Positions 31,880-45,853 of a DNA stretch of 64,000 bases are shown piece by piece (position 1 is the stretch's first letter; every line of letters starts with the position of its first letter). The stretch lies in the NCBI GenBank assembly GCA_977020255.1, contig CDROCS010005781.1, positions 62,001-126,000 on the forward strand, written 5' to 3'. Made by a program: the position numbers and the translations under genes. The notes under the pieces are model-generated. The model made no database searches. It had not been told where the DNA came from and saw only the letters and a list, made by a program, of their open reading frames with translations. This stretch comes from Obrimoposthia wandeli (taxonomy: Eukaryota).

Positions 31880-32968
31880 ATGAATCATGAAATCGAATTA
31901 AAGCTGCGTTTAAATACCAGCGAGCTGCCTTTGTTAGAAAAGGCCTTAGCTAACCCTCAATTTATCAGCGAACCAACACTTAAGTTGCTTAATCGCTATT
32001 TTGATACTCCTGATATGGGGTTAAGCCAAGGTGGCGCGGCGTTACGCATACGCCAGCAAGGTATCGTTGATTTTAAAAACGGTATTGCCAGCGGCACACT
32101 CTCAGATGAACGTATTATTCAAACGTTAAAAACGCGCGGCACCAGTTCGGCAGGTTTGCATCAGCGTATGGAATGGGATTGGCCGCTAACCGAGGTTGAA
32201 CTTGACCTCAGCTTGATTAAAAACGGTGATGCACAAACGCACTTATCCCCAGCCTTATCGCTAGAGGCCATTGCGCCTTTATTTACCACCGACTTTCAGC
32301 GCAAAGTATGGATGTATCAGCAAGGTGAAACCCTGATTGAATTGGTATTAGATCAAGGCGAAGTCTCGACCGACGAACACCGCATCGATTTATTAGAACT
32401 CGAATTAGAATTGAAGCAAGGTCAGCCTGAAGTGCTCTTTCAGGTTGCGCAACAGTTAGCCGACCAGTGCCCGGTATTAATGAGTGATATTAGTAAAGCC
32501 GAGCGCGGCTATGGATTGCTCGCGCGATCAGCCCGTTATGCTGGTATTAAAAAAGATTGGGCAGAAAAAATTCCTAATATTGATGAGCAGCAAGATGTGA
32601 TTAGCTGTTTTAAAGCGTTCTTTACCTTTCAGCTATCCAGTTTTCAGCGCAGTTTAGAATACAGTATTTGGGATGGTCAGCATGACCAACAAGCGCAAGT
32701 GGTTTCGCAGATGATGTTATTACGCAATCTGCTTTCTGTATTTGCGCATATAGATTGTCTGCCAGATGCTCAACTCTTACAGCGCCAACTAGACCAAGCC
32801 AGTCAAGCACCGCTAGAATTGTCACGTCTTTGGGGACAGCTCAGTTTAGCCTGCGGGCAATGGTTATTTAGTTTATCTAATGACTGTGCAAAATTTGAAA
32901 TGAGCGCAGAAGAAAAAATCTCAATAGACTTACATATTGAAGCGCTAGCAAAAGGAATACGTTCATGA
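31880..32968 (+). CDS. CYTH-domain inorganic triphosphatase (YgiF-like)
   Basis: Probable start MNHEIELKL at 31880. YFDTP, LRIR, ELELELK, SKAERGY. Confidence 0.88.
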   Translation: MNHEIELKLRLNTSELPLLEKALANPQFISEPTLKLLNRYFDTPDMGLSQGGAALRIRQQGIVDFKNGIASGTLSDERIIQTLKTRGTSSAGLHQRMEWDWPLTEVELDLSLIKNGDAQTHLSPALSLEAIAPLFTTDFQRKVWMYQQGETLIELVLDQGEVSTDEHRIDLLELELELKQGQPEVLFQVAQQLADQCPVLMSDISKAERGYGLLARSARYAGIKKDWAEKIPNIDEQQDVISCFKAFFTFQLSSFQRSLEYSIWDGQHDQQAQVVSQMMLLRNLLSVFAHIDCLPDAQLLQRQLDQASQAPLELSRLWGQLSLACGQWLFSLSNDCAKFEMSAEEKISIDLHIEALAKGIRS

Positions 32969-34722
32969 ACTCGGTTGCAGATCGCCCCGTCGCGCTTAAT
33001 GTCTTGCTGGATGATTTAAAAAAAGCAGGCATGTTAGATGATGACAATTATCAGTTAGGACAATTTGCTCGCCGTGGCCCGTCCGAATTAAAAATGCACC
33101 CTTTTGCATTCATCGGCAAACAAAAACTCACCAACCACAAAACCGGTGGCAAGCTGAGTGAAGAAATTATTTGTGAATGGGCCGCAGCAGAAAAAGGCCT
33201 AAGCTATGCTCGTATCGATCCGCTAGAAGTTGATGTGGCCGCGATTACCTCAGCCATGTCGTATGCGTTTTCAGAACGCCATAAAATATTAGCGCTAAAA
33301 GTTAATAAAGAAGAATTAGTCGTTGCGTGCAGTGAGCCCAATATTACATCTTGGGTACAAGATTTAGAGCATGTATCACGTCGTAAAATTGTACGCATTA
33401 TCGTGATGCCTACCGAAATAGAACGTCACCGTGTTGAATTTTATCAACTCGCCAACTCGATTAATCGAGCATCTTCACAGCACGATGGCATTAGTGGCAT
33501 TCAAAATTTAGAATCAATGCTAGAGCTTGGTAAAGCCAGTGCGCCTGAAGCTAATGACGAGCACATTGTGAATGTCGTTGATTGGTTATTGCAGTACGCC
33601 TTTGAACAGCGCGCCAGTGATATTCATATTGAACCTAGGCGTGAACTGGGGAAAGTACGCTTTCGTATCGATGGTGTTTTGCACCTAGTATATGAATTGC
33701 CCGCGCAAGTCACCCAAGCGGTTGTTGCCCGAATCAAAACCTTAGGCCGCATGAATATTGCAGAAAAACGTAAGCCACAAGACTCACGTTTAAAAACTAA
33801 AACCCCTGCGGGTGAAGAGATTGAATTACGCCTATCAACCTTGCCAACAGCGTTTGGCGAAAAACTCGTTATGCGAGTTTTTGACCCGAGCGTATTAGTT
33901 CGAAACTTTGCCGAACTTGGTTTCAGCAAAGAAGATTACCGCCGCTGGAAAGACATGACGGCGCAAAACAACGGCATCATCTTTGTAACAGGGCCAACAG
34001 GGTCGGGTAAAACCACGACCCTGTATTCAACCTTAAAAGAACTCGCGACGGTTGAAGTGAACGTTTCAACCATTGAAGATCCGATTGAAATGATCGAACC
34101 CGCGTTTAACCAAATGCAGGTTAACCACAGCATCGGTCTCGATTTTGCCACGGGCGTACGCGCGTTATTACGACAAGATCCCGATATTATTATGGTCGGT
34201 GAAATTCGTGATTTAGAAACCGCAGAAATGGCGGTGCAATCAGCGCTAACCGGCCACCTAGTATTATCAACACTGCACACCAACGACGCACCCACCGCGA
34301 TTACTCGATTATTAGAGCTGGGCTTGCCGCCGTATTTAATTCGATCAACGACGTTGGGCGTTATGGCGCAGCGACTGGTGCGAATCCTTTGCCCACACTG
34401 CAAAGAAGAAGGCGAGATAGACGCTGTTACATGGAAAGATCTTGTCGCCCCTTGGACCGTAACCAAACCCGCAAAAATATACCACCCCAAAGGTTGCTTA
34501 GAATGCCGTGATACAGGCTTTATTGGCCGTATGGGTATTTATGAAGTGCTGCCGATGAGTAATGAGATTAGTAAATTGATTGATGGTGACTCTGATCACC
34601 TGAAAATACGTCAGCAAGCCATGAAAGAAGGCATGCACAGCTTACGCTTAAGTGGCGCGCAGAAAATTGCGTCGGGCTTGACCACCATAGAAGAAGTTAT
34701 GAGAGTGGCACCAATGTCTTAA
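32965..34722 (+). CDS. Stand-alone GspE/PulE/PilB-family secretion ATPase
   Basis: ASDIHIEP, GPTGSGKTTTLY, LRQDPDIIMVGEIRD, STLHTN, CPHC...CLEC. Confidence 0.9.
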   Translation: MNSVADRPVALNVLLDDLKKAGMLDDDNYQLGQFARRGPSELKMHPFAFIGKQKLTNHKTGGKLSEEIICEWAAAEKGLSYARIDPLEVDVAAITSAMSYAFSERHKILALKVNKEELVVACSEPNITSWVQDLEHVSRRKIVRIIVMPTEIERHRVEFYQLANSINRASSQHDGISGIQNLESMLELGKASAPEANDEHIVNVVDWLLQYAFEQRASDIHIEPRRELGKVRFRIDGVLHLVYELPAQVTQAVVARIKTLGRMNIAEKRKPQDSRLKTKTPAGEEIELRLSTLPTAFGEKLVMRVFDPSVLVRNFAELGFSKEDYRRWKDMTAQNNGIIFVTGPTGSGKTTTLYSTLKELATVEVNVSTIEDPIEMIEPAFNQMQVNHSIGLDFATGVRALLRQDPDIIMVGEIRDLETAEMAVQSALTGHLVLSTLHTNDAPTAITRLLELGLPPYLIRSTTLGVMAQRLVRILCPHCKEEGEIDAVTWKDLVAPWTVTKPAKIYHPKGCLECRDTGFIGRMGIYEVLPMSNEISKLIDGDSDHLKIRQQAMKEGMHSLRLSGAQKIASGLTTIEEVMRVAPMS

Positions 34723-34862
34723 TGAATAGCAAAAATCAGCATTAGGCATTAAAAAATACGATGCATTCATAGTTCCTGATCAAAATAACCGCTAAGCTAG
34801 TTAAAAGCGTAGAATCAGGCGCATTAAAAGAATCACACCACACAAAACCATAGATACCAATA

Positions 34863-35366
34863 ATGGCAACAGACATAGACACAGTACCTCCTATTATCGA
34901 CTTGGAAGCCTCGGGATTTGGCCGAGGCAGCTATCCAATAGAAGTAGGCTTTGCGCTAGAAAACCGAGAAATTTACTCCTTTTTAATTAAACCAGAAGCC
35001 GATTGGACTCATTGGAGTGAAGAGGCTGAGGAAATTCATGGCATTAGCCGTGAACAACTGCAAGCCGAAGGCATGAGCATAGAAGACATTGCCCTTAAGC
35101 TAAATGACATGCTGCATGGACAAACACTTTATTCAGATGCTTGGAGTTTCGATAGCTCTTGGATCGGACGTTTATTCGACAGCGCTGGTATAGTGCAGCG
35201 CTTTCGAATAGAAACCATCAACAAGTTGCTTAAACCAGAGCAAGTAGAATTTTGGCACCCAACCAAAGAAGCCGTACTACAAGAACTAGGCATGAAAGCC
35301 CACCGAGCAGCGATTGATGTGCAAGTACTGCAAGAAACCTATTTACGAATTGCCAACATGAGTTAG
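34863..35366 (+). CDS. DEDDh 3'-5' exonuclease-like protein
   Basis: IIDLEASG, YPIEVG, HRAAIDV. Confidence 0.8.
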   Translation: MATDIDTVPPIIDLEASGFGRGSYPIEVGFALENREIYSFLIKPEADWTHWSEEAEEIHGISREQLQAEGMSIEDIALKLNDMLHGQTLYSDAWSFDSSWIGRLFDSAGIVQRFRIETINKLLKPEQVEFWHPTKEAVLQELGMKAHRAAIDVQVLQETYLRIANMS

Positions 35367-35397
35367 CGGTACGAGAACATGCTTAAACATAATGCAT

Positions 35398-35438
35398 AAA
35401 AAAGCCTTAATCATTGATAGTGATTAAGGCTTTTTTTT
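35398..35438. terminator. Strong intrinsic terminator at the core/cassette-array boundary
   Basis: AAAAAAGCCTTAATCA-7 nt-TGATTAAGGCTTTTTTTT. Confidence 0.85.
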
Positions 35439-35714
35439 GTTTTTAATAATGGCTGTTCGCATATCACAATTAAGGCTAATCATTAAATCGTTGAAAAATA
35501 TAAGAAAACTTAGCCATATATTGATAAGCCCTGATAAGCGAACACACGATGAAAGTGATATCAAATTGACAAAAGCGAACGGTAAATATAGTGTTGTGTC
35601 TATTATTAACAGGGATAGTCGTATGATTTCAAACAAGTTTCCTCTTCATTCGCCTTTCCCAGATATAAGGGGTTATGCGAACTCGGTTCGTATAACTCAC
35701 TTGTTATAGCTGTA

Positions 35715-36083
35715 ATGAATATTATATTTAGAGTTGTTGGTTACCTTCTTGGAGCCCTGATAGTTATTACTTTAGGTGTATATCTGTATATGTTTCGAGA
35801 ACAGAGCATAGATATAGATCTTGTTCCTACAGAGTTTAAATATTGTGGGAAGCAGATCTATGGAAATGATGAAAGTTACGAAAACATAGTGAAGTGGCTG
35901 AAGAGCAATAGTGATGATTGGGTTCTTTCATTTGCTAGTTACGTTCCTATACACAGATATTATCATGGCGCTTTTAACGTTAATGTACATAGAGAAGCTG
36001 TAATAGTCTCTTACAAAACTGATTACGGCTACCCACAATTTATTAAACAAGGGCAGCATAATTTACCACTGTCTTGCAATTAA
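35715..36083 (+). CDS. Cassette 1: membrane-anchored hypothetical protein (122 aa)
   Basis: N-terminal TM helix, followed by an attC. Confidence 0.75.
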   Translation: MNIIFRVVGYLLGALIVITLGVYLYMFREQSIDIDLVPTEFKYCGKQIYGNDESYENIVKWLKSNSDDWVLSFASYVPIHRYYHGAFNVNVHREAVIVSYKTDYGYPQFIKQGQHNLPLSCN

Positions 36084-36085
36084 AC

Positions 36086-36143
36086 AGCTAACAAGAAAAG
36101 GCATTGGACGCGAAAATCCGCGCCCATGCTTTTGGCGTTAGGG
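36086..36143 (+). repeat. attC site 1 (58 bp)
   Basis: AGCTAAC...GCATTGGACGCG-AAAATC-CGCGCCCATGC...GGCGTTAGGG. Confidence 0.88.
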
Positions 36144-36147
36144 TTGT

Positions 36148-36690
36148 ATGTTTAAAATCATTTTTACTTGTGCAGGTTTAAGTCTATTAGTCTGGTTGGT
36201 AGCTATTTTTAGTCTGTGTACATATGGAGGCTGTACTGGAGATCTAAGTAGGTATTTATTAAGCTTACTTGGTTTTTTAGCTACGGGGACTGTGATTGGA
36301 TTATTGTTATCTAGTTATACTTATCGAAAAATATCAGAGATTCTACTTTTGATTCCCGAAAGTATTATATTGATTTTATATTCAGTAATAACTTCAATTT
36401 CATTCATGCCTCTGAAGTCAGAAAATGAGTTAGATCATTATCTAATCGCTATCGTTGCCTTCACATCATGTCTCGGAATTAAATATACCCAAATATTGTT
36501 TGGGAATATGAAAATTTATATTAAGTTGATAATCACGGTTGTGTACTTTTTTGTATTAGTTGTTGCATCTGTATTCATGCTGGTAATTTTTTGGCCCATC
36601 ATATGTATAATGCTCGCGTTATACATTGGAGTTCTTTCTTTGGGATGGCTTATTATTGTACGAGTTCGTAATATTTCAGTAGGCCCCTAA
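36148..36690 (+). CDS. Cassette 2: multi-TM hypothetical protein (180 aa)
   Basis: About 5-6 hydrophobic segments. The stop codon lies inside the attC R'' (CCCTAAC). Confidence 0.8.
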   Translation: MFKIIFTCAGLSLLVWLVAIFSLCTYGGCTGDLSRYLLSLLGFLATGTVIGLLLSSYTYRKISEILLLIPESIILILYSVITSISFMPLKSENELDHYLIAIVAFTSCLGIKYTQILFGNMKIYIKLIITVVYFFVLVVASVFMLVIFWPIICIMLALYIGVLSLGWLIIVRVRNISVGP

Positions 36691-36776
36691 CGATCAGTTG
36701 GTGTACGCACCTACGGTGCTGGGACGGTTACTCGTTCCTCGCTACGTTTCACCGCCCCACAACAAAAGCGTTAAGC
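36685..36776 (+). repeat. attC site 2 (92 bp)
   Basis: CCCTAAC (complement of the preceding GTTAGGG)...CAAAAGCGTTAAGC. Confidence 0.9.
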
Positions 36777-36782
36777 AGTATT

Positions 36783-37223
36783 ATGAATAAAGAATTAATA
36801 TCATATTTAGATGGCTATCTACATTCACTTAGACGGCTTAGTGGTAATTTATGTGATTTTTGGGCGGAAACATTTGAATTTGAAAGTGATATAGAGAAAG
36901 GTTTTCGGGATCATTTGGCTGATATAGAAGTATCAATAATTAATAAGTCTCAAATAGGATACAAAGAGATAGATCAAGTCTTGAAAGAAAATGCTTTATC
37001 CAAATTATTAGTTAAAGATACATCCTTACTAGAAATGTTTTCATGGGATATAGTTGAGTATCTCCAAATGACCTATCAACTAATTGAGCCAGAGATTAAT
37101 CCTATATATAAAAAAGAGGCACTGCTTTTTACTGCGAAATCTGAATTCCATGGTGAGTTTGTTTATATTGTAGTGCCTGTTCTCAATCAAGCAGTCGTAG
37201 TGGGGTTGGCAACTCGTGCTTAA
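36783..37223 (+). CDS. Cassette 3: hypothetical protein (146 aa)
   Basis: ATG 7 nt after the attC core, with the stop inside the next R''. Confidence 0.8.
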   Translation: MNKELISYLDGYLHSLRRLSGNLCDFWAETFEFESDIEKGFRDHLADIEVSIINKSQIGYKEIDQVLKENALSKLLVKDTSLLEMFSWDIVEYLQMTYQLIEPEINPIYKKEALLFTAKSEFHGEFVYIVVPVLNQAVVVGLATRA

Positions 37224-37316
37224 TAATCAGTTGGTGACCCCCCCCTTCGGGGTGGGACGGTTACACTTCGCTCGTTCCTCGCTACGTTTCACCGCCCCAC
37301 AACAAAAGCGTTATAA
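37218..37316 (+). repeat. attC site 3 (99 bp), sibling of site 2
   Basis: GCTTAAT...GTTATAA. Its 43-nt 3' part is identical to site 2. Confidence 0.88.
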
Positions 37317-37337
37317 CCCCATACAAGGAAGGCAACA

Positions 37338-37937
37338 ATGATTATGAAGATATCGTTAATACTTATGATTATTCTGATGGCCAATAATTCGTACGCTGAA
37401 ATGTACAAGTGGGTTGATAGTAATGGGGCAACACATTTTTCTGATAAGAAACCAGATAATGAGAACGCTATTGATGTTGTTCTTAATTCGAGCAATATAT
37501 TTGACGGTAGGAAAGAAAATTCAGGTGACCTTTCTTCCCCCTACGTTAAGGATAAATTTAAAATGCCTTTTAAGGCGTCTACAGTTCCATATAGATTTGT
37601 AATGACATCAGCAATGAATGTGGATGAGCCTGTAGATAGGCTGTCAGAGATTAAAATTAGTCTTGATCAAAAAAGCTTCTACTCATATGTAAAACTCACT
37701 GGAGTAGAGTCAGGAGTAAACTACAACCTCAGAATAAGAGTAATTGATGAAAAAGGGGAACTTGTTTTTGATAAAAATAAGGAACTAAAGACTAAAACTA
37801 ACTCATTATGGTTTGCTGCTAGAATATCACCAAACATAAGTATTGATGAACCTGGTGGCTGGACAATTCAGGCAACTTTGAACAATAAAAAATTATTTTC
37901 TGAGAAGCGTTTAATTTCATTTAATAAAAAGTTATAA
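37338..37937 (+). CDS. Cassette 4: secreted DUF4124-domain protein (199 aa)
   Basis: Signal peptide followed by AEMYKWVDSNGATHFSDKKP, with a beta-rich C-terminus. Confidence 0.8.
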   Translation: MIMKISLILMIILMANNSYAEMYKWVDSNGATHFSDKKPDNENAIDVVLNSSNIFDGRKENSGDLSSPYVKDKFKMPFKASTVPYRFVMTSAMNVDEPVDRLSEIKISLDQKSFYSYVKLTGVESGVNYNLRIRVIDEKGELVFDKNKELKTKTNSLWFAARISPNISIDEPGGWTIQATLNNKKLFSEKRLISFNKKL

Positions 37938-37988
37938 CTAATAAAAGCAACGAACAGCTAAAGCTGCGCCCTGTTTTAGGCGTTATGT
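37932..37988 (+). repeat. attC site 4 (57 bp)
   Basis: TTATAAC (complement of GTTATAA)...CAGCTAAAGCTG...AGGCGTTATGT. Confidence 0.82.
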
Positions 37989-38009
37989 GAAAAGTACTGA
38001 GGACGCATC

Positions 38010-38408
38010 ATGAAAGGTAGTTGTCTCTGCGGCGAAATAGAATATGAAGTTAGTGAACTAGATTCACCGATTCAGCATTGTTCTTGTAATACGTGCAGAA
38101 AAGCACATGCTGCGGCGTTCAATACGGCATCAGGAGTTCAAAGTAGCAATTTCCGATGGTTAAAAGGAGAATCGCTGCTTTCTAAATTTGAATCGTCGCC
38201 GGGAAAAATAAGGTATTTTTGTTCAAAGTGTGGAACTCATTTGATTAAAGAAAAGAAGGGAAGTTCAGTTCTAGTCTTGAGGGTGGCAACTCTTGATGAA
38301 GATCCTGGTAAAATACCGGAGTTCAGAATTTGGTCTTCACATGAAGTTCCTTGGTTAAACTACACCTCAGCAATACCTACTTACGATGAGTGGGAACCTG
38401 GGAGATGA
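38010..38408 (+). CDS. Cassette 5: GFA/CENP-V family protein
   Basis: MKGSCLCGEI, HCSCNTCRK, RYFCSKCGT. Confidence 0.92.
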   Translation: MKGSCLCGEIEYEVSELDSPIQHCSCNTCRKAHAAAFNTASGVQSSNFRWLKGESLLSKFESSPGKIRYFCSKCGTHLIKEKKGSSVLVLRVATLDEDPGKIPEFRIWSSHEVPWLNYTSAIPTYDEWEPGR

Positions 38409-38412
38409 AATC

Positions 38413-38502
38413 ACATAATAAGGCCAAGCAACATCAACCACTTCGTGGTTTGGACAGCCTGGACGCGCAAAAAGCCGAGCGCCCATTATTTTAGCGTTAG
38501 CA
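38413..38502 (+). repeat. attC site 5 (90 bp)
   Basis: ACATAAT (one mismatch to the complement of GTTATGT)...AACCACTTCGTGGTT...AGCGTTAGCA. Confidence 0.82.
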
Positions 38503-38510
38503 GAATAGAT

Positions 38511-38867
38511 ATGAATGGAAAAATAGGTCCACACAGAGGAATTGAATTTATTCTTTTTGATAGAGGAGAAAAACATGTAGCCTACTTTGATTGGGACTCA
38601 TGGCCTGAAGAAAATTTCCCAGCAGTAGAGTTGGTTCGAGCCAATACGTTAAAATTTAGACAGCCTGAAAGTGAAAGCGAATCATACATATTTTATCGAA
38701 GCGGATACTTCGCTGAGGCAGAGGAGCTACGAGATATAATTCTTTCAGGATTTACTGTTCATGATGATGATTTCGAAACCAAAGAGTATCGTATTGGAGA
38801 AATACTTGGCTATACCAAAGAAGATGTTTCGTTATATATTAGTACCTTTAAAGCTAGATGCTGCTAA
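38511..38867 (+). CDS. Cassette 6: hypothetical protein (118 aa)
   Basis: True start MNGKIGPHRG at 38511; the track's 38445 start reads through the attC. Confidence 0.8.
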   Translation: MNGKIGPHRGIEFILFDRGEKHVAYFDWDSWPEENFPAVELVRANTLKFRQPESESESYIFYRSGYFAEAEELRDIILSGFTVHDDDFETKEYRIGEILGYTKEDVSLYISTFKARCC

Positions 38868-38928
38868 CAAAACATTCGTGATCGCCCCTGCGGGGCTGTG
38901 ATCTTGCCCCACAATATTGGCGTTAGCA
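38862..38928 (+). repeat. attC site 6 (67 bp)
   Basis: TGCTAAC...GCCCCTGCGGGGC...GGCGTTAGCA. Confidence 0.88.
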
Positions 38929-38938
38929 CTTTTAAATT

Positions 38939-39346
38939 ATGGATATTGAAAAGTTATTGAAAAAAAGACAGCTGAATGTTCAAGAACAGAACATTCTTAC
39001 TAAGCATAGAATTTTTAAAGATGCCTCTTTCTGGCGAAACAATGGAATTCCTAAAGCTCTAAACTCTATTTTCCGAGGACATGGTATAAATACTTCAAAG
39101 TGTATTCTCATTGATTATGAGCAAGACTTCCCTGGAATTAGTACCGATGAAGGATCAGTTCTAACTGAAGATGGGAAGTTTTATGAGTTCGAGGCTGATC
39201 TTAATCTTGAAAGAGATAAAACTATTGAGCTTTATAGATTTGAAGAGATTACGGACACTATCGAAATAAATAAACATAAGCTTGGTACTGGCGCTACTGA
39301 AGGTTTTTTGGCATTAGAAGTTCTCGGTGAGTTGAATCAGTGCTAA
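38939..39346 (+). CDS. Cassette 7: hypothetical protein (135 aa)
   Basis: Flanked by attC sites, with the stop inside TGCTAAC. Confidence 0.8.
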   Translation: MDIEKLLKKRQLNVQEQNILTKHRIFKDASFWRNNGIPKALNSIFRGHGINTSKCILIDYEQDFPGISTDEGSVLTEDGKFYEFEADLNLERDKTIELYRFEEITDTIEINKHKLGTGATEGFLALEVLGELNQC

Positions 39347-39428
39347 CAATCAGTTGGTGGTTCAGCCCCCCTAAAGCTTGACGCTTTCAGGACGTAAGCA
39401 GATGCATGTCTTTAGTTAAACGTTATGC
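39341..39428 (+). repeat. attC site 7 (88 bp), poorly paired
   Basis: TGCTAACAATCAGTTGGTG (left arm like sites 2 and 3)...AAACGTTATGC. Confidence 0.72.
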
Positions 39429-39451
39429 ACTAACTGGGTTGAGAGATATTA

Positions 39452-39871
39452 TTGAATATTGAACATTTATTTGAAGAGGCTGTCGATGAAGATGACAGTG
39501 AGAAACTTGAGCATTTTCTTGAGGCGCTAATGGATTCGTGGGTCTATTTTTTTCTGCATGAAACTTCTGGGAAAAAGACACCTATAAGTTCAGAAAGAGT
39601 CGTGCATATTATTAGTGTTAGCAAGCAGAATCCCATTAACCTTTTTACAATTAATAATGAAATGGGACATAATGGCGTCATTTACACTGATGGCGATTTG
39701 GCGGTAAGTCTAGCTGAGTTTGATTGTAAAGTTGGGAAAATGAAGGGGCGTAACGCTTTTAAAATGTTTCTAGGAATTCAAAATGTTGATGGTGTTTATG
39801 TTCAAGCAAGCTCTTGTAATGTGCACATACCTAAAAACGAAATTAATCGTTTGCTTTCCAGTTATGCATAA
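39452..39871 (+). CDS. Cassette 8: SseB-like hypothetical protein (139 aa)
   Basis: TTG start. The pattern FLEALMDSWVYF...VIYTD resembles SseB N-terminal domains (recognition only). Confidence 0.65.
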   Translation: MNIEHLFEEAVDEDDSEKLEHFLEALMDSWVYFFLHETSGKKTPISSERVVHIISVSKQNPINLFTINNEMGHNGVIYTDGDLAVSLAEFDCKVGKMKGRNAFKMFLGIQNVDGVYVQASSCNVHIPKNEINRLLSSYA

Positions 39872-39963
39872 CAAAAGTAGGTAAACGACAAGTTTTACGT
39901 CGCTCCGTTTGTGTAATGGCTTCGCCCATTTTACACAAAGCTGTCTTTATCAAGGTGTGGGAA
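39866..39963 (+). repeat. attC site 8, degenerate right core
   Basis: GCATAAC complements GTTATGC. Inner stem TTTGTGTAA...TTACACAAA. The right end reads CAAGGTGTGGG instead of CAAGGCGTTA. Confidence 0.65.
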
Positions 39964-40160
39964 ATGGATTTCAAAATAGAAGCAACAAACTGTATACCAT
40001 TCTATATAATGACTATATGGGGTTTGGGTATCTAGTATAAATTGCAGTTATCTTTGGTATTTTGATTGATATGTCTTTTAATCAGGCCAAACTTACTACA
40101 CGGACTATCAATGGGGTTACTAATGTTGCAGGTTCTGGATTCCTTGTTAACGGCATTTAA
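39964..40160 (+). pseudogene. Frameshifted, truncated remnant of a ninth cassette ORF (membrane protein)
   Basis: MDFKIEATNCIPFYIMTIWG, then in a shifted frame VWVSSIIAVIFGILIDMSF. Confidence 0.45.
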
Positions 40161-40232
40161 TCTTAAGCATGAAATAATCCAAAGATTAGATGTCGGTGAA
40201 ATTAAAAGTTATTAATAAGGATGGTATAGAAC

Positions 40233-40892
40233 ATGGATATGAATTTAATCGGGATTTTTCTAACGGTCGCTCTGGCTCACTTCTTGGCGCTTCTTAGCCC
40301 GGGGCCAGATTTCGTTATTCTGGTAAAAAGTGCTATAAAAAATGAAAGGAAAAAGGCTTTGGGAGTTGCCTTCGGTATATCCATTGCCAATGCATTATAC
40401 ATAGTGCTTTGCTTAATTGGAGTAGGTGCATTATTAGCAAGTTCGGTCTATATCATGATTGCTCTAAAAGTTGCGGGTGGGCTGTTTTTAATCTATTTAG
40501 CTATTCAGGCTTTACGTGCAAAGAAGAGTGATTACGCAAGTTTATCTGCTCAGATTAATAAAGATGAATTGGGGGCTACTACATTTTTCAATGAATTTGT
40601 TGTTGGCTTTATGTCGGGAATATTAAACCCTAAGAATATTTTATTCTATTTAAGTTTGTTTACTGTTGTGCTGACGAATGATGTAAGTCTTACATTTAAG
40701 ATCATGCTTGGTATCTGGATGACCTTGTTAGTTTTTATGTGGGATGCTGCAATTGTTTTTGTTTTGTCAGGAGATAAGGCACGAAGAAAGTTTACGAAAG
40801 TATCGTATTACATTGATAAAGTTACTGGTGCTATTTTAGGTTTGGCTGGTTTTGCGATTGTAAAGTCAGCACTGACTAAATCAAACGTATGA
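40233..40892 (+). CDS. LysE/RhtB family translocator
   Basis: LLSPGPDFVIL, GILNPKNILFYLSLF. Confidence 0.92.
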   Translation: MDMNLIGIFLTVALAHFLALLSPGPDFVILVKSAIKNERKKALGVAFGISIANALYIVLCLIGVGALLASSVYIMIALKVAGGLFLIYLAIQALRAKKSDYASLSAQINKDELGATTFFNEFVVGFMSGILNPKNILFYLSLFTVVLTNDVSLTFKIMLGIWMTLLVFMWDAAIVFVLSGDKARRKFTKVSYYIDKVTGAILGLAGFAIVKSALTKSNV

Positions 40893-41003
40893 ATTATAAA
40901 AGGTTGTAGGGTGTTGATTTAATCACTTTTAATTCTACCGATGGAATATAATAATGACACTCCGCATTGCTCTCAAGCCATTTTTTGGATTAATAAATAC
41001 ACG

Positions 41004-41927
41004 ATGAACAGCATAGATTACCACAAAATATTTCTCGAAATTACAGCCGAGCTTAAAGGTGTTGATGATCTTGGTGAGGTTGCTAGTTATATTCCAGAAT
41101 TAGGTAAGGTGAATCCAGACAAGCTGGGTATTCATCTTACGACTGTTGATATGCAAGAGTATTCATTCGGTGACTCAAATGAAAAGTTTTCAATTCAAAG
41201 TATCGCAAAAGTATTGTCTCTGACCTTAGCTCTGAAAATTATGGGTAGAGAGATGTGGAATCGAGTAGGGGTTGAACCATCAGGTTCTGCTTTTAACTCG
41301 TTAGTGCAGTTAGAATATGAAAAAGGTATTCCTCGCAATCCCTTTATCAATGCCGGTGCGATTGTTGTTTGTGATATTTTGGTTTCTTGTTTGAAAGATC
41401 CAAAGGTGGAGTTGCTTGAGTTTATTCGAAAGACATCGGGTATTGATAGCATCGATTATTGTTCTGATGTAGCCGATTCAGAGAAAAAAACGGGCTATAG
41501 GAATTATGCACTGACTTACTTTATGAAGAGTTTTGGCAATATTCATAATGACGTCGAATCGGTTCTCGATTTATATTTCCACTTATGTTCAATAGAAATG
41601 ACCTGTAAAGAACTCACGCAAACATTTTTATTTCTTGCTTTTGGGGGTGTAAATCCTATAACCAATGAGCGGGTTATTAGCCAGGAGCGATCAAAGAGAA
41701 TAAATTCGGTGATGCAGATGTGCGGTTTTTATGATGAAGCGGGGGAGTTCGCTTTTAAAACCGGGTTGCCCGGTAAGAGTGGTGTGGGTGGTGGGATTGT
41801 TGCTATTCATCCTGGACAATTCTGTATTGCAGTTTGGAGTCCTAAGCTTAATGTTAGCGGTAACTCTTACAAGGGTATGAAGGTGCTTGAAACTCTTACT
41901 AGTAAAACTCAGTCTTCTATATTTTGA
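41004..41927 (+). CDS. glsA: Glutaminase
   Basis: GEVASYIPEL, FSIQSIAK, VGVEPSG, PRNPFINAGAI, GLPGKSGVGGG. Probable start 41004. Confidence 0.93.
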   Translation: MNSIDYHKIFLEITAELKGVDDLGEVASYIPELGKVNPDKLGIHLTTVDMQEYSFGDSNEKFSIQSIAKVLSLTLALKIMGREMWNRVGVEPSGSAFNSLVQLEYEKGIPRNPFINAGAIVVCDILVSCLKDPKVELLEFIRKTSGIDSIDYCSDVADSEKKTGYRNYALTYFMKSFGNIHNDVESVLDLYFHLCSIEMTCKELTQTFLFLAFGGVNPITNERVISQERSKRINSVMQMCGFYDEAGEFAFKTGLPGKSGVGGGIVAIHPGQFCIAVWSPKLNVSGNSYKGMKVLETLTSKTQSSIF

Positions 41928-41931
41928 TTGG

Positions 41932-41967
41932 GTGCTCGCTTCAGCGATTATTAATCCGGCGTTAGCT
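41932..41967 (+). repeat. Right-half attC remnant
   Basis: GCTCGCTTC...TTATTAATCCGGCGTTAGCT directly after the glutaminase stop, with no left arm. Confidence 0.55.
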
Positions 41968-42243
41968 AGGCATTCCTGTTTTTATGGCTAGTTTCTACGA
42001 TTAATTACTGATTTTTTAATTATTTTCTTTTAGAGAAAATTAAAGTGGTGCAGCGCTCGCTTCGCCTGATCTTCAGTTTAAATAGATATTTAGCTACGAA
42101 TAATGGCTGATATTTTAAGTCTTTTTCTTTCACTTTATTGCTAGAACTAGGGTTTCACCTTTTTGACAGCCGTTAAAAGAATATCTAAAATCTGCGCGCT
42201 GACTTTTCAAGTCAAAAAATTCATTTACCCAAGGAAGGTTGTT

Positions 42244-44493
42244 ATGTCATTACGATTTATAAGGTCCGGTGTCATTGCTATTATAGCATTGGCGCTATCA
42301 GGTTGTTTCAACGTCGAGCTAACGGCTCCCGATTCTGTAGAACAAAATACAGTATTTGCCATGACGGCTACTCCCGAAGATAATAATGGCGATGTTAGTT
42401 ATCAGTGGTCATTAAATGATGGCGTTATTTCTGAAGATGAAACTCATCACACCATGCTTCCAGTTTTAGGTGAATATACCCTAACGGTTGTTGCAACGGA
42501 TGAAAAAGGCAATGAGGATACGCAAAGTAAAACCATTTCTGTAGTAGCACAAGCCTCTCTTAACCCTGACTTCTCATTTGGTATAAATGTATCTGATAAA
42601 GCAGGGTATGCGTTGCCTGAAACTCCGGTCACGATCAACGGTACAACCGTTATGACTGATCAATATGGACTTGCCCAGTTTGATGGAATTTCTCAAACAT
42701 CACTTATGTTAGTCAGTGCTAGCAAAGAAGGGTATTTGACTCAAACTTATCAATACAGTTTCGATGCCATGCAAGAAAGTGCAATGGCTAGTTTAACGCT
42801 TCAAAATATTAACCCTGTTAGCCACATTATTGATAGCACAGAAGCTGTTGATATTACTGAGACTGAGCTGCATTCAAAATTAATTTTAGCGCCTAATAGC
42901 TTTGTTGATGCTAATGGTAATGCGGTAACGGGTGATGTAGAAATTACGATTACGCCTATTGATATTCGTGCTGTTGATAATGCGTTTTTAGGCGGCGGTC
43001 AAGCGCTAACAGATTCTGGTGAAGCGGTTGCATTAATATCTACGGGTATGGCTGATTATCAGTTTTCACAAAACGGCTCTGCTGTTTCTTTAGCAGAAGG
43101 TGTTAGTGCAACAATTGAAATGGACCTTGCCGTTGCTATTGGTGATGACGGACGTGTTTTTGCTGAAGGTGATACCATTGAAATGTGGTGGTTTGATGTT
43201 AAAACAGGTTTTTGGATTGAAGATGGCGTAGGAACAGTTCAACTATCTGATACAAGTGAAACTGGTTTGAAGCTTGTCGCAACCGTTAAGCACTTTACCA
43301 CGTGGAATTGGGATTATTATAAGCAAGATGATCGCTCAAGTATTACCTTTAATTGCCTTAAAGATGGTCAACCTTTAGCAACGAATGACAGCTGCCGAAT
43401 TACGGCTTCTAGTACTTCGATCAGTCGTGAGTTTCTTGCGAGTAGTGAAGGTGTTACCGCAATCAATACGCCTCCTAATGTGGCTTATTTAGTTGCTGCA
43501 AGTTCAACAGCTGGAAGTTCTTTTTGGACGGGGACTGCAATATTAACCACAGTGCCAGGAGAGAATACTGTTTCAGTTAATATGATCTCAACAACCACTC
43601 ACACCGGTTACATTCAATGTCGAGTAATTAATAATGCAGTGACTAGCATTGTGCCATGTGACACCGTTATTACTGACACATCTATTGGGTCTCAGAATAT
43701 TGATACCACAGAGTTCAAAAACTATCGGGCCAGCTTTACTTATGTTAATGGGGAAGTATTGAATATTTCTGCAACAACGGATAGTGGACTAAATAAAACA
43801 ACTCTCTTTGATACAAGCGGCATAAATGGAACGTTGGATATTGAAGTTATATTTGATATTAAATACGGTTCACTACAATGTTCAGCGACATTAGACGGTT
43901 CTGATTTGCAGTATTTTCCATGTGATGCGTTAGTGTCAGATTCTGAGGGTTCATCTTTTCCTCTCTTTGCTAACGACTTTTCAGGAACACCTCCAAAGGC
44001 CAACTTCACGTACTCTAAGAATGCACAAGAGCTATCGATTGAAGTAGCCTCTATCTTTGATGAAGCTCGTTTACGTCAAAGTTATGCTTATGAAAGAAGT
44101 TTCAACGGAAATAATAGTCGTTTTTATATTTCAGGTGAAGGTACGCTTATTACAATTGACCTAGCTCGTGAGGCTGCTATTGCTCATGCTGTTTATGATG
44201 CAAAGGCTGAGAATTTGTATACTTTTAAATGTGTTGATTTTATGGGGTCAGACATTAACTGTAATATAACGTGGTACAACTCTATGGAGGCCATTATTTT
44301 CGAAGGTAATATTAATGAGTTATCTGCTCCTGATGTATTGCCAACATGGATGAGCGGCAAAGTATCCATCGAAGCGCCTCTTGAAGGATTTGGTGATGCA
44401 AGAGATTGGGAGTTAGGCTTGTATTCAACAAATACTGAGATCGATGCTGTGAATCGAGTCATTACATTTACTTTAGAAAACATACCTATGTAA
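42244..44493 (+). CDS. Large lipoprotein with PKD-like and carboxypeptidase-regulatory-like beta-sandwich domains (about 749 aa)
   Basis: Start MSLRFIRS at 42244, lipobox LSG-C, SYQWSL...GEYTLTVVATD, MWWFD..TGFWIEDG, HFTTWNWD. Confidence 0.8.
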   Translation: MSLRFIRSGVIAIIALALSGCFNVELTAPDSVEQNTVFAMTATPEDNNGDVSYQWSLNDGVISEDETHHTMLPVLGEYTLTVVATDEKGNEDTQSKTISVVAQASLNPDFSFGINVSDKAGYALPETPVTINGTTVMTDQYGLAQFDGISQTSLMLVSASKEGYLTQTYQYSFDAMQESAMASLTLQNINPVSHIIDSTEAVDITETELHSKLILAPNSFVDANGNAVTGDVEITITPIDIRAVDNAFLGGGQALTDSGEAVALISTGMADYQFSQNGSAVSLAEGVSATIEMDLAVAIGDDGRVFAEGDTIEMWWFDVKTGFWIEDGVGTVQLSDTSETGLKLVATVKHFTTWNWDYYKQDDRSSITFNCLKDGQPLATNDSCRITASSTSISREFLASSEGVTAINTPPNVAYLVAASSTAGSSFWTGTAILTTVPGENTVSVNMISTTTHTGYIQCRVINNAVTSIVPCDTVITDTSIGSQNIDTTEFKNYRASFTYVNGEVLNISATTDSGLNKTTLFDTSGINGTLDIEVIFDIKYGSLQCSATLDGSDLQYFPCDALVSDSEGSSFPLFANDFSGTPPKANFTYSKNAQELSIEVASIFDEARLRQSYAYERSFNGNNSRFYISGEGTLITIDLAREAAIAHAVYDAKAENLYTFKCVDFMGSDINCNITWYNSMEAIIFEGNINELSAPDVLPTWMSGKVSIEAPLEGFGDARDWELGLYSTNTEIDAVNRVITFTLENIPM

Positions 44494-44505
44494 GTAGGTC
44501 TCTAA

Positions 44506-44540
44506 AATATAAAGGCTGATTCATCATCAGCCTTTATATT
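44506..44540. terminator. Intrinsic terminator
   Basis: AATATAAAGGCTGAT-5 nt-ATCAGCCTTTATATT. Confidence 0.8.
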
Positions 44541-44802
44541 CCTCCGCTCCTCCTCGTAAAATTTAGCATCAACTACATCACTACCCATAAACTAGATTTA
44601 ACTTTATCCCCAGCTTAACAGCGCTTAACTCGATCCTCCATTTCTGAAAATAATAAATCTGCTATTGTATTGGTTTATTTCAAAATTCAGAGCGCGATAT
44701 CCATAAAATAGCCTTGATTGTTAAAGATACTTATTGTCGTTAAGATTCAAGTAAATCTGTGTATCTTATTGTGAAATCGCTATTAGCCCTTATCGAGAAA
44801 AT

Positions 44803-45171
44803 ATGAATATAAAGCAATTTTCAGAACTTGTAGATGTTTCGGCGTATACCATTCGCTATTACGAAAAGATTGGTTTATTAAAAAATATAATTCGAAATTC
44901 GAGTGGTCATCGTGACTTCACTGAAAAAGATGTTGAGTGGATTTCGTTTGTTAAAAGACTGAAAGATACTGGCATGCCTCTTGAAACTATTGCTGCTTAT
45001 GCTGATTTAAGGCATCAAGGTCAAAGTACTAGTGGATGTCGGATGAATCTACTTGAGGAGCATACTAAGCTGCTCAAAGATAAAATTGATATAGAAATGC
45101 TTCACCTTAAAAAATTAGAAGAAAAGATTAAGTATTATAAAAAAGTGATTGAAGACGAAATTGTTACTTGA
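44803..45171 (+). CDS. MerR-family regulator (AdhR/NmlR-like)
   Basis: TIRYYEKIGLL...RNSSGHRDF, LKDTGMPL. Confidence 0.92.
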   Translation: MNIKQFSELVDVSAYTIRYYEKIGLLKNIIRNSSGHRDFTEKDVEWISFVKRLKDTGMPLETIAAYADLRHQGQSTSGCRMNLLEEHTKLLKDKIDIEMLHLKKLEEKIKYYKKVIEDEIVT

Positions 45172-45198
45172 CTTAGAGTTAGCTCTAAGATGTAAGGT
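45168..45198 (+). promoter_or_regulatory. MerR-type promoter with 19-bp spacer and dyad operator
   Basis: -35 TTGACT (45168-73), 19-bp spacer, -10 TAAGGT (45193-98), dyad CTTAGAG-TTAG-CTCTAAG. Confidence 0.85.
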
Positions 45199-45235
45199 TG
45201 CTGAGTGAAAGTAAATAACCTTACAAGGACAGATT

Positions 45236-45622
45236 ATGAATAATAAACGTTTTGAATCCGGGCTGAATAAACTGAAAGAAATTGATGGTGAGGCTGGCCA
45301 GAAAGTTATTGAGAGCTTGGCGACTATTTCACCTGACCTCGCAAAGATGATTATTGAGTTTGGGTTTGGTGAGATTTATCAACGACCAGGGCTTGATTTA
45401 AGAGCTAGAGAGTTAGCGACTGTGGCCGCATTAACGGCTCTAGGGTGTTGTCAGCCACAGTTGCATGTTCATATTAACGGTGCTTTAAACGTTGGTTGTA
45501 AGCCGCAAGAAATCACCGAAACTATTATACAGATAGCGCTTTATGCAGGTTTTCCTGCATGCTTAAATGCGATGTTTGTTGCGAAAGAAGTTTTTATTGA
45601 ACGTAATATTATTAAGGCCTAA
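45236..45622 (+). CDS. Carboxymuconolactone decarboxylase family protein
   Basis: FGFGEIYQRPGLDLRARELATVAAL, QLHVHINGALNVG, YAGFPA. Confidence 0.92.
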   Translation: MNNKRFESGLNKLKEIDGEAGQKVIESLATISPDLAKMIIEFGFGEIYQRPGLDLRARELATVAALTALGCCQPQLHVHINGALNVGCKPQEITETIIQIALYAGFPACLNAMFVAKEVFIERNIIKA

Positions 45623-45853
45623 TAAACCGTACATAAAAAGAAAAGTGCCCTCTTATATTTGCTCTCAAGTCTATTGGTTATATCCGCAGATAAATGTGAC
45701 CAGTAGTCTTAGAATATGCTTATATAATATGAGGGTAGCAAGGCATGATACGCTTTCCCTTGAATTAACGGTGCCACGAGAATAGAAATCCCTTAAGATG
45801 GATGCTATTAGCATCTAAATTGTGTAATACACTTTGATTTCTGGATTAGTTGT

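What the first reader, a model, noticed from the sequence alone, without database searches (positions are those of the whole stretch)
35703..40160. Integrase-less integron cassette array (CALIN) with eight attC sites
Seen: core complementarity is preserved cassette by cassette: GTTAGGG/CCCTAAC, GTTAAGC/GCTTAAT, GTTATAA/TTATAAC, GTTATGT/ACATAAT, GTTAGCA/TGCTAAC twice, and GTTATGC/GCATAAC. Stops fall in or beside R'' and starts follow R' closely. No intI or attI lies upstream; a strong terminator (35398-35438) insulates the array from the exonuclease gene. Known: CALINs can be re-mobilised by an IntI in trans. Most of the cargo is of unknown function.
Basis: partly seen in the sequence, partly recalled or inferred. 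Interest (0 to 1): 0.78.

Follow-up and report, generated by a model that had tools for sequence, protein, structure and literature searches.

The report
Integrase-less integron array that keeps attI
This stretch of an Oleispira-like marine bacterium is a real integron gene-cassette array whose integrase gene is missing but whose docking site (attI) and leader survive; it is an ordinary kind of element, though the clean, recurrent way the integrase is missing bears on how such orphan arrays arise.

Summary
Eight co-oriented small cassettes lie at 35703 to about 39935. Each starts at G|TT and ends in an R'' box complementary to its own start. That chain has 6-7 links, against 3 at most in 200 shuffles.

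A covariance model built only from clinical class 1 attC sites places 4 of its top 5 window hits on the predicted sites, to the base. A second model, built from attC sites of other genomes, scores five sites at E 1e-6 to 2e-3; the next hit is E~1.

Three sites are decayed: attC5 is chimeric, attC7 has lost its L' arm, and the last is a remnant without R'. No intI or intI fragment lies anywhere in the 64 kb.

Positions 35455-35709 are 80-92% identical to the intI-attI spacer of integrons found in 17 metagenome contigs. Some of those carry a bona fide integron integrase beside it (TIGR02249, 367 bits). Conservation stops exactly at G|TT, with 16 different first cassettes.

So this is a CALIN derived from an Oleispira-type chromosomal integron, a known kind.

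One point is unexplained. Eight intI-less copies in unrelated flanks all begin within 3 nt of the same GTTCGC motif, which hints at site-specific formation.

The parts
35398..35438 (+). Intrinsic terminator of the upstream RNase T-like exonuclease gene (34863-35366)
   Evidence: 18-bp stem plus T run. The exonuclease matches PF00929 only weakly.
35455..35671 (+). Integron leader, homologous to the intI-attI intergenic region of related integrons. intI and its 5' UTR are absent to the left.
   Evidence: 80-92% identical to 17 metagenome loci and 89.6% to L006. In L109 the same segment starts about 40 nt from the intI start codon. Invariant blocks are shown.
35455..35465 (+). Left-end motif GTTCGCATATC, where homology starts in all intI-less copies. 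It is an inverted repeat of the attI hairpin's left arm.
35566..35594 (+). Candidate cassette promoter (Pc-like). TTGACA at 35566-35571, then TATAGT after 15 nt or TAGTGT after 17 nt. Inferred, not shown.
   Evidence: The block is invariant in 14 leaders and partly kept in L008. The consensus scan did not report it.
35672..35709 (+). attI-like site: GTTATGC (direct repeat), hairpin 35672-35696, L box GTATAAC 35690-35696, 6-nt spacer, R box GTTATAG 35703-35709. Crossover lies between G35703 and T35704.
   Evidence: Conservation in 19 loci stops at G|TT and 16 different sequences follow. attC sites follow on the same strand only. intI lies divergently beside it in L109, L106, L107, L111 and L114. 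The window has one extra T in the spacer and a TA insertion after GTTA.
35704..36143 (+). Cassette 0: ORF 35715-36083 (122 aa, unknown function). attC1 at 36086-36143 (58 bp), canonical.
   Evidence: attC1 scores R2 E=3.3e-6 and R1 E=0.36 with exact ends. The bottom-strand MFE is the canonical hairpin with two bulged bases on the 3' arm. The cassette is found alone in runs X4 and X7.
36138..36776 (+). Cassette 1: ORF 36148-36690 (180 aa, no family). attC2 at 36685-36776 (92 bp), canonical.
   Evidence: R2 E=0.0017. Canonical bottom-strand fold equals the MFE. 90% identical to an attC of L006.
36771..37316 (+). Cassette 2: ORF 36783-37223 (146 aa, unknown). attC3 at 37218-37316 (99 bp), same family as attC2. 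Its R'' reads AAT instead of AAC.
   Evidence: R2 E=2.4e-4, R1 E=0.59. The canonical fold costs 3 kcal/mol more than the MFE.
37311..37988 (+). Cassette 3: ORF 37338-37937 (199 aa, DUF4124). attC4 at 37932-37988 (57 bp), canonical.
   Evidence: PF13511 at 34.8 bits. R2 E=4.9e-4, R1 E=1.3.
37983..38502 (+). Cassette 4: ORF 38010-38408 (132 aa, GFA family). attC5 at 38413-38502 (90 bp), chimeric and decayed.
   Evidence: PF04828 at 83.6 bits. The protein is 100% identical in 74 blocks of the public collection, in other arrays. DNA identity of 98% runs only from 37984 to 38424, and the rest of attC5 resembles a different attC of L081. No model hit. R'' reads AAT.
38497..38928 (+). Cassette 5: ORF 38511-38867 (118 aa, unknown). 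attC6 at 38862-38928 (67 bp), canonical and the best-scoring site.
   Evidence: R1 E=0.0021 and R2 E=1.2e-6 with exact ends. Canonical fold equals the MFE.
38923..39428 (+). Cassette 6: ORF 38939-39346 (135 aa, unknown). attC7 at 39341-39428 (88 bp). Its left half is of the attC2/3 type; the L' arm does not pair.
   Evidence: No model hit. No canonical fold, z-score -0.3.
39423..39935 (+). Cassette 7: ORF 39452-39871 (139 aa; weak SseB-like match below cut-off). attC remnant from 39866: R'' GCATAAC plus an inner hairpin at 39909-39940, with no R'.
   Evidence: In run X2 an attC R' is followed directly by a relative of the sequence from about 39933 on (tables 5 and 5c).

Best explanation
This is the cassette array, attI site and leader of a chromosomal integron of the kind carried by Oleispira-like marine Gammaproteobacteria. 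The integrase gene is entirely absent, so by IntegronFinder's definition it is a CALIN.

Shown:
- Eight promoterless, co-oriented cassettes were each captured by IntI-type recombination at G|TT.
- Five attC sites are canonical: attC1, 2, 3, 4 and 6.
- The upstream 255 bp is the integrase-proximal platform, with the attI crossover at 35703/35704.
- The same platform sits beside a bona fide intI in related contigs.
- Individual cassettes of this array occur in other arrays and other genomes.

Inferred:
- The cassettes are read from a conserved promoter in the leader.
- An IntI supplied in trans, from elsewhere in the genome or from an incoming element, would fold the attC bottom strands and cut between G and TT.
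- It could then excise cassettes 0-3 singly and cassettes 4+5 as a pair, and insert new cassettes at attI.
- Cassettes 6 and 7 are locked in by decayed sites.
For: - Cassette-wise R'/R'' complementarity forms a chain of 6-7 links, against 3 at most in 200 shuffles.
- Model R1 was built only from 8 clinical class 1 attC sites. Run on the whole window, both strands, filters off, it gives attC6 E=0.0021, attC1 0.36, attC3 0.59 and attC4 1.3. These are 4 of the top 5 hits, all on the + strand with base-exact ends.
- Model R2 was built from 22 attC sites of L006, L081 and L082, none from the window. It gives E=1.2e-6, 3.3e-6, 2.4e-4, 4.9e-4 and 1.7e-3; the next hit is E=0.99.
- R2 gives 0 hits in 90 kb and one stray hit (E=0.28) in 82 kb of array-less Oleispira loci.
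- Bottom strands of attC1, 2, 4 and 6 fold canonically at or near the MFE; attC1, 4 and 6 show bulged bases on the 3' arm.
- No IntI is found by tblastn with IntI1 (E up to 10) or with the L109 IntI (E up to 1) in the 64 kb.
- None of the six 308-330 aa ORFs scanned against Pfam (the size expected for IntI) is a recombinase.
- A metagenome scan with the hairpin motif found 17 loci. The leader is 80-92% identical to the window up to G|TT, and 16 different sequences follow.
- attC sites are found only downstream of the motif, on the same strand.
- A divergent intI lies next to the leader in L109: TIGR02249 at 366.9 bits against a cut-off of 265, PF13495 plus PF00589, and 43.5% identity to IntI1. 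intI pseudogenes lie there in L106, L107, L111 and L114.
- The GFA cassette is 98% identical in DNA to copies in unrelated arrays, and identity starts at the G|TT boundary.
- Cassettes 0, 1, 2, 4 and 6 occur singly in other sequencing runs. For cassettes 1, 2, 4 and 6 the matches start within 3 nt of the predicted start; cassette 0 matches from its ATG on, with a variant start in X7.
- L006, another Oleispira species, has the same leader after the same exonuclease gene but seven entirely different cassettes.
Against: - IntegronFinder's own attC model could not be run, and Rfam has no attC family.
- R1 hits other than attC6 are individually not significant.
- R2 is not fully independent for attC2, 3 and 6, because L006 carries related attC sites.
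- Three of the eight sites are decayed, and the attI junction has 3 extra nucleotides, so present-day activity is uncertain.
- The rest of the genome could not be searched for intI.
- No RNA data were available, and the promoter was not picked up by the consensus scan.
- The right-hand end of the array is not resolved.
Confidence: 0.9

Rival explanations
1. Fossil array. The element is a dead remnant being absorbed into the chromosome. No integrase acts on it any more, and the cassettes behave as ordinary fixed genes.
For: - No intI in 64 kb.
- attC5 is chimeric, attC7 has lost L', and the last attC has lost R'.
- R'' reads AAT in attC3 and attC5.
- The attI spacer is 6 nt instead of 5, and there is a TA insertion at the first junction.
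- Close relatives L008, L010 and L012 keep only a diverged leader fragment in front of ordinary genes.
Against: - Five attC sites and the attI core are still canonical and score as well as sites in intI-bearing contigs.
- The non-coding leader is better conserved between the window and L006 (89.6%) than the flanking genes (80.3%).
- The window and L006 share no cassette.
- The GFA cassette is 98% identical to copies elsewhere, so its acquisition is recent.
Confidence: 0.3
2. Split integron. A functional intI with its own attI lies elsewhere in the same genome. This array was separated from it by a rearrangement and remains part of one functional system.
For: - About half of CALINs are in genomes that encode IntI (PMC4889954, read).
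- In the source-like run X1, the leader/attI and the attC2/3-type repeat have about 5-10 times the word depth of the cassettes. Several contigs with variant letters cover the leader, so further copies exist in that sample.
Against: - The array has its own attI and leader, which a simple split downstream of attI would not give.
- The break lies at the same point as in seven other intI-less copies, which does not look like a random rearrangement.
- X1 may hold more than one organism.
Confidence: 0.3
3. Not an integron. The palindromes between the small genes are terminators or REP-like repeats, and the core complementarity is coincidence.
For: Some of the sites were also flagged as terminator-like hairpins on the minus strand. 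Free folding z-scores of several sites are unremarkable.
Against: - Chain statistics.
- Base-exact hits of a model trained on clinical attC sites.
- Homology of the upstream region to intI-linked attI regions.
- The same cassettes occur in other arrays, bounded at G|TT.
Confidence: 0.02

Closest known systems
CALIN (cluster of attC sites lacking an integron integrase; Cury et al. 2016, PMC4889954)
   Same: At least two attC sites within 4 kb, co-oriented promoterless cassettes of mostly unknown function, and no intI or recognisable intI pseudogene within 10 kb.
   Different: Here the attI site and the whole intI-attI spacer are retained, and cognate intI-bearing versions of the same platform were found. 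The origin from a complete integron is therefore shown rather than assumed. The paper reports that 95% of CALINs have no intI pseudogene nearby and leaves their origin open.
Genus-level chromosomal integrons with progressive integrase loss, e.g. the ilvD-linked Xanthomonas integron (bioRxiv 10.1101/2025.06.18.660453)
   Same: A platform at a recurrent chromosomal position in one genus (downstream of the exonuclease gene in the window, L006 and L101). intI is intact, pseudogenised or gone depending on lineage. Cassette content is lineage-specific.
   Different: Only 2-3 of 13 Oleispira loci have the array. The same platform also occurs in other flanks (hisC, LysR, lipoyl synthase, dCTP deaminase). 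Loss of intI has a precise common end point.
Class 1 integron (intI1-attI1-cassettes, e.g. In2 of R100)
   Same: The same cassette grammar: G|TTRRRY starts, complementary RYYYAAC ends, stops in R''. A model built from aadA1, VIM-2, aacA4, arr-3 and dfrA attC sites recognises the window's sites. attI has the same layout of an inverted L/R pair plus upstream direct GTT repeats.
   Different: There is no integrase. The cognate IntI is only about 43% identical to IntI1. There are no resistance genes, and the setting is chromosomal.
attC x attG insertion of cassettes into genomes (Loot et al., bioRxiv 10.1101/2022.09.11.507474)
   Same: It offers a route by which cassette DNA arrives at non-integron sites and gives integrase-less attC clusters.
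   Different: That route moves cassettes, not an attI and leader. Here the unit found in new flanks starts with the platform itself.

Membership tests
Integron cassette array / CALIN | Two or more attC sites less than 4 kb apart, recognised by an attC covariance model | tested here: met
   The model from class 1 attC sites puts 4 of its top 5 window hits on the sites. The model from attC sites of other genomes gives 5 hits at E 1.2e-6 to 1.7e-3. IntegronFinder's own model is not available here.
Integron cassette array / CALIN | attC anatomy: R'' RYYYAAC and R' GTTRRRY, an L''/L' stem, an unpaired spacer, and extrahelical bases on the bottom strand | tested here: met
   The canonical hairpin fold is met for attC1, 2, 4 and 6, with bulged bases evident in attC1, 4 and 6. 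attC3 has AAT in R''. The anatomy is not met for attC5, attC7 or the last remnant.
Integron cassette array / CALIN | No integron integrase gene nearby (4 kb by default, 10 kb relaxed) | tested here: met
   tblastn with IntI1 and with the L109 IntI finds nothing in the 64 kb. Pfam on the candidate ORFs shows no recombinase.
Integron cassette array / CALIN | Cassettes are independent mobile units bounded at G|TT | tested here: met
   GFA cassette boundaries. Single cassettes in other runs. Cassette-wise core complementarity.
Integron cassette array / CALIN | Sites are recombined by an IntI | not testable with these tools
   Needs a recombination assay.
Complete integron | intI adjacent and divergent to attI | tested here: not met
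   The leader abuts the exonuclease terminator at 35439-35454. intI is present at that position only in related loci L109, L106, L107, L111 and L114.
attI site | A conserved integrase-proximal site where conservation ends at the G|TT crossover and varied cassettes follow | tested here: met
   In 19 loci, 16 different sequences follow TCACTG|TTA. attC sites occur only downstream. The site is adjacent to intI in 5 loci.
attI site | Bound and recombined by the cognate IntI as double-stranded DNA | not testable with these tools
   Only the layout (L box, spacer, R box, upstream direct GTT motifs) was read from the sequence.
Sedentary chromosomal integron (Cury et al. criteria) | More than 19 attC sites, or present in all genomes of the species | tested here: not met
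   Seven sites plus a remnant. Absent from 9 of the 11 related Oleispira loci scanned with R1 or R2. Species-level frequency is not testable.

The most novel reading that the evidence does not exclude
The integrase-less unit 'leader with promoter + attI + cassettes' may be made or moved by site-specific recombination, rather than by random decay of intI.

Eight intI-less copies sit in unrelated flanks: the window, L006, L099, L100, L101, L104, L105 and L108. All begin within 3 nt of the same GTTCGC(C/A)TATC motif, about 40 nt from where intI starts in the complete integron. That motif is the inverted repeat of the attI hairpin arm. Two further homology breaks (L008, and the second copy in L099) fall at the next GTT core, G|TTATGC.

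This would mean IntI-type crossover at secondary GTT cores of the platform. The product would be portable, promoter-equipped docking sites that still capture cassettes from an integrase acting in trans.
Probability: 0.35. Interest if true: 0.75.

Novelty: new member of a known kind. Interest (0 to 1): 0.5.

Why it matters
CALINs are about as common as complete integrons in bacterial genomes, yet 95% have no integrase remnant nearby and their origin is still debated (PMC4889954; bioRxiv 10.1101/2022.09.11.507474). In this case the parent integron family, its integrase, its attI and several stages of integrase loss can be laid side by side. The integrase-less form also has a precise, recurrent end point. 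That makes the question of how orphan arrays form, and whether they stay active, testable with a defined attI, a defined cognate IntI and defined good and decayed attC sites. For Oleispira, a cold-water oil degrader, it marks a variable locus downstream of the exonuclease gene that exchanges small genes with a large seawater cassette pool.

Tried and rejected
- Rfam holds no attC family. A gathering-threshold search of the window and an E-value search of 35000-41000 gave only noise.
- My first ad hoc scanner for R''/R' plus L-box pairing missed the sites and was dropped.
- Single cassette-like triplets (start, complement, next R') are common by chance, about 25 per shuffled strand. Only the chain length is informative.
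- RNAalifold gave no consensus structure on the top-strand alignment of class 1 attC sites, so I supplied the R/L pairing by hand.
- cmsearch with default filters found nothing. All model searches were repeated with filters off.
- The MAFFT alignment of the window's own attC sites was too poor to build a window-derived model, so the reverse test (window model against class 1 sites) was not done.
- Exact-protein look-ups for the exonuclease, cassette 1 and cassette 6 found nothing.
- ORFs inside the leader have no family, so they are not an intI relic.
- PADLOC found no family for any of the eight cassette proteins. NCBIfam added only a weak, below-cut-off GFA-type match for cassette 4.
- The leader motif is absent from viral contigs.
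- Earlier-findings look-ups by sequence and by words were blank.
- No R'' partner was found for the L008 junction.
- The right-hand boundary could not be fixed by comparison with L010. Homology resumes only about 20 nt before the glutaminase start, so lysE also lies in the variable segment.
- No papers on Oleispira integrons or on CP101527 are in the library.
- I considered the leader being itself an ORF-less first cassette whose short attC is the hairpin. I rejected this because new cassettes always follow the hairpin and never sit between intI and the leader.

Full report
**What is there.** Between an RNase T-like exonuclease gene (34863-35366, with a strong terminator at 35398-35438) and a LysE-family gene (40233-40892) lie eight small ORFs. 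All are on the + strand and are separated by 57-99 bp imperfect palindromes.
- Each unit begins at a GTT followed by four bases. It ends in a seven-base box that is the reverse complement of its own start. This match is 7/7 for five cassettes and 6/7 for two, where AAC has become AAT.
- The first cassette fits once a TA insertion is allowed. A copy of that cassette in run X7 has the uninterrupted complement.
- This cassette-by-cassette rule is what recombination between G and TT of circular cassettes produces. The known class 1 cassettes I extracted obey it as well: VIM-2 with GTTATGC/GCATAAC, and aacA4 with GTTAGGC/GCCTAAC.
- Single triplets of this kind are frequent by chance, but a chain in which every end site is the next start is not. 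The + strand has 7 links and the - strand 2. In 200 shuffles the maximum was 3, reached 6 times.
- Six of the eight stop codons are the TAA inside R''.

**Are they attC sites?** Rfam has no attC family, so I built models.
- R1 was built only from eight attC sites of clinical class 1 integrons (aadA1, aac(6')-29a/b, VIM-2, arr-3, aacA4, dfrA5, dfrA27). These were taken from annotated plasmids, and I imposed the textbook R''/R' and L''/L' pairing.
- R1 was run on the whole window, both strands, with filters off. Its best hit is attC6 (38862-38928, E=0.0021). Hits 2, 3 and 5 are attC1, attC3 and attC4. All are on the + strand, with ends identical to the base with my delineation.
- The same model finds more than 20 sites in L081, 4 in L082 and 5 in L006.
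- R2 was built from 22 of those sites, none from the window. It scores attC6, attC1, attC3, attC4 and attC2 at E=1.2e-6 to 1.7e-3, and the next hit is at E=0.99.
- As a negative control, R2 gives no hit in 90 kb and one stray hit in 82 kb of array-less Oleispira loci.
- One caveat: L006 carries relatives of attC2, 3 and 6, so R2 is fully independent only for attC1 and attC4.
- Bottom strands of attC1, 2, 4 and 6 adopt the R-stem / unpaired spacer / L-stem hairpin at or within 1.3 kcal/mol of the MFE; attC1, 4 and 6 carry bulged bases on the 3' arm.

**Three sites fail.**
- attC5 is chimeric. The GFA cassette is 98% identical to copies in other genomes from its G|TT start to 5 nt past R''. After that it switches to the left half of a different attC, whereas the copies elsewhere carry a 138-bp attC that R1 recognises.
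- attC7 has an attC2/3-type left half but no pairing L' arm.
- The last site has R'' and an inner hairpin but no R'.

**No integrase, but an attI.** tblastn with IntI1 (E up to 10) and with a marine IntI (E up to 1) finds nothing in the 64 kb. None of the six 308-330 aa ORFs scanned against Pfam, the size expected for IntI, is a recombinase.

The 255 bp upstream of the first cassette are not anonymous, however.
- They are 89.6% identical to the DNA upstream of a different seven-cassette array at the same position in another Oleispira species, L006. The flanking T2SSE and exonuclease genes are only 80.3% identical.
- A metagenome scan with the hairpin motif at 35672-35696 returned 17 contigs. 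All share the leader at 80-92% identity.
- In all of them conservation runs to TCACTG|TTA and then stops. Including the window and L006, 16 different sequences follow.
- R2 finds 19 attC sites in these contigs. All are downstream of the motif on the same strand and none is upstream.
- In L109 the other side of the leader is a divergent gene that scores 366.9 bits on the integron-integrase model TIGR02249 (cut-off 265). It has PF13495 plus PF00589 and is 43.5% identical to IntI1, with one frameshift near residue 286. L106, L111 and L114 have multiply frameshifted copies, and L107 a truncated one.

Hence 35455-35671 is the intI-attI spacer. Positions 35672-35709 are the attI site: an L box GTATAAC, a spacer, and an R box G|TTATAG, preceded by direct GTT repeats. 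The crossover lies between 35703 and 35704.

**Evidence for movement.**
- The GFA cassette protein is identical in 74 blocks of the public collection. One copy lies inside a long array rich in toxin-antitoxin cassettes (L081). Others lie in unrelated MAG contigs.
- In runs X2, X4 and X7, cassettes 0, 1, 2, 4 and 6 occur on short contigs. For cassettes 1, 2, 4 and 6 the matches start within 3 nt of the predicted starts; cassette 0 matches from its ATG on, and in X7 its start reads GTTAGCTGT. Cassettes 5 and 7 are absent from these runs.
- The leader/attI and the attC2/3-type repeat reach word depths 10-100 times those of the cassettes. No piece spans several cassettes, so cassette order in other strains is not known.
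- The window and L006 share the platform but not one cassette.

**Setting in the genus.** The segment between the exonuclease gene and an epimerase gene (46567-47532) is variable in all 13 Oleispira loci.
- Only the window, L006 and probably L101 carry the platform there.
- L008, L010 and L012 keep a diverged leader fragment in front of ordinary genes.
- The same platform is also found after hisGDC (L108, followed by an RraB-like cassette and Thoeris-type genes). It also follows a LysR gene (L100), lipoyl synthase (L109), dCTP deaminase (L111) and a heptosyltransferase (L107).

**What remains unexplained.** In all eight intI-less copies with a visible left flank, homology to the complete integron begins within 3 nt of one point. 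This is the motif GTTCGC(C/A)TATC, at window 35455, about 40 nt from the intI start codon in L109. The DNA to the left is unrelated in each case.
- By contrast, intI decay in the other contigs is irregular.
- The motif is the inverted repeat of the hairpin's left arm, and GCGAAC recurs three more times in the leader.
- Two further homology breaks fall at the next GTT core, G|TTATGC: L008 keeps the leader without the hairpin, and the second copy in L099 has the hairpin without the leader.
- I read this as a hint that IntI-type crossover at secondary cores of the platform creates or moves integrase-less docking units.
- The right-hand junction and empty sites could not be examined, so this stays a hypothesis.

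**How it most likely works.**
- Shown: the anatomy, the relationship to intI-bearing integrons, and past capture at G|TT.
- Inferred: transcription from the invariant TTGACA...TATAGT/TAGTGT block at 35566-35594. The consensus scan did not report this block, and no RNA run was available.
- Inferred: an IntI acting in trans could excise cassettes 0-3 singly and cassettes 4+5 together, and could insert new cassettes at attI. Cassettes 6 and 7 are fixed by their decayed sites.
- The extra T in the attI spacer and the TA insertion at the first junction may lower attI activity.

**Cargo.** Only the GFA domain (PF04828) and DUF4124 pass family cut-offs. PADLOC found nothing, and NCBIfam added only a weak, below-cut-off GFA-type match for cassette 4.

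**Verdict.** This is a genuine CALIN, a known kind and a common one (PMC4889954). It is documented here with its attI, leader and cognate integrase family, and it is partly decayed. The recurrent precise end point of the integrase-less form is the one feature a specialist might not expect.

Noticed in passing
window 38010-38408; L081 (CP101527.1) 1-20399; L082-L088: The 132-aa GFA-family cassette protein is 100% identical in 74 blocks of the public collection. In CP101527.1 it sits in a long cassette array with HicB, RelB/ParE, ParD/ParE and Phd/YoeB pairs, directly after an IS110-family transposase gene. A class 1-derived attC model finds more than 20 sites there.
   Followed up: partly
L108 7544-10290 (= L115 6174-8920), contig PJEL010001557.1: The same leader/attI lies downstream of hisG-hisD-hisC. 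The first cassette is RraB-like with a strong attC (E=7.6e-8). It is followed by ThsA-like (SIR2_2 + STALD) and ThsB-like (TIR) genes, i.e. a Thoeris-type defence pair in an integrase-less array.
   Followed up: partly
L099 412-436 and 3253-3277: This contig has two copies of the attI hairpin. The second has no leader, follows about 2 kb of larger genes without attC sites, and is again followed by cassettes with attC sites.
   Followed up: partly
window 39936-40232: An unassigned 300-bp spacer lies between the last attC remnant and lysE. In run X2, a relative of the sequence from about 39933 follows directly after an attC R', so it may be the start of a further, eroded cassette. lysE itself lies in the segment that is absent from relative L010.
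   Followed up: partly
window 35400-40300 laid on runs X1, X2, X4, X7: In seawater metagenomes the leader/attI and the attC2/attC3-type repeat reach word depths of thousands, against tens for the cassettes. Contigs of the source-like run X1 break at exactly these elements, and several contigs with variant letters cover the leader. Further copies therefore exist in that sample.
   Followed up: no
window 35455-35702 versus 32965-35366, compared with L006 and L008: The non-coding leader is 89.6% identical to L006, but the adjacent protein-coding genes are only 80.3% identical. L008 is closer in the coding genes (83.4%) yet has only a 69%-identical leader fragment and no array.
   Followed up: partly
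window 40941-46192: The rest of the variable segment up to the conserved epimerase gene holds a glutaminase, a 776-aa PKD-domain protein, a MerR-family regulator, a CMD-family protein and a 112-aa ORF. None is flanked by attC sites.
   Followed up: no
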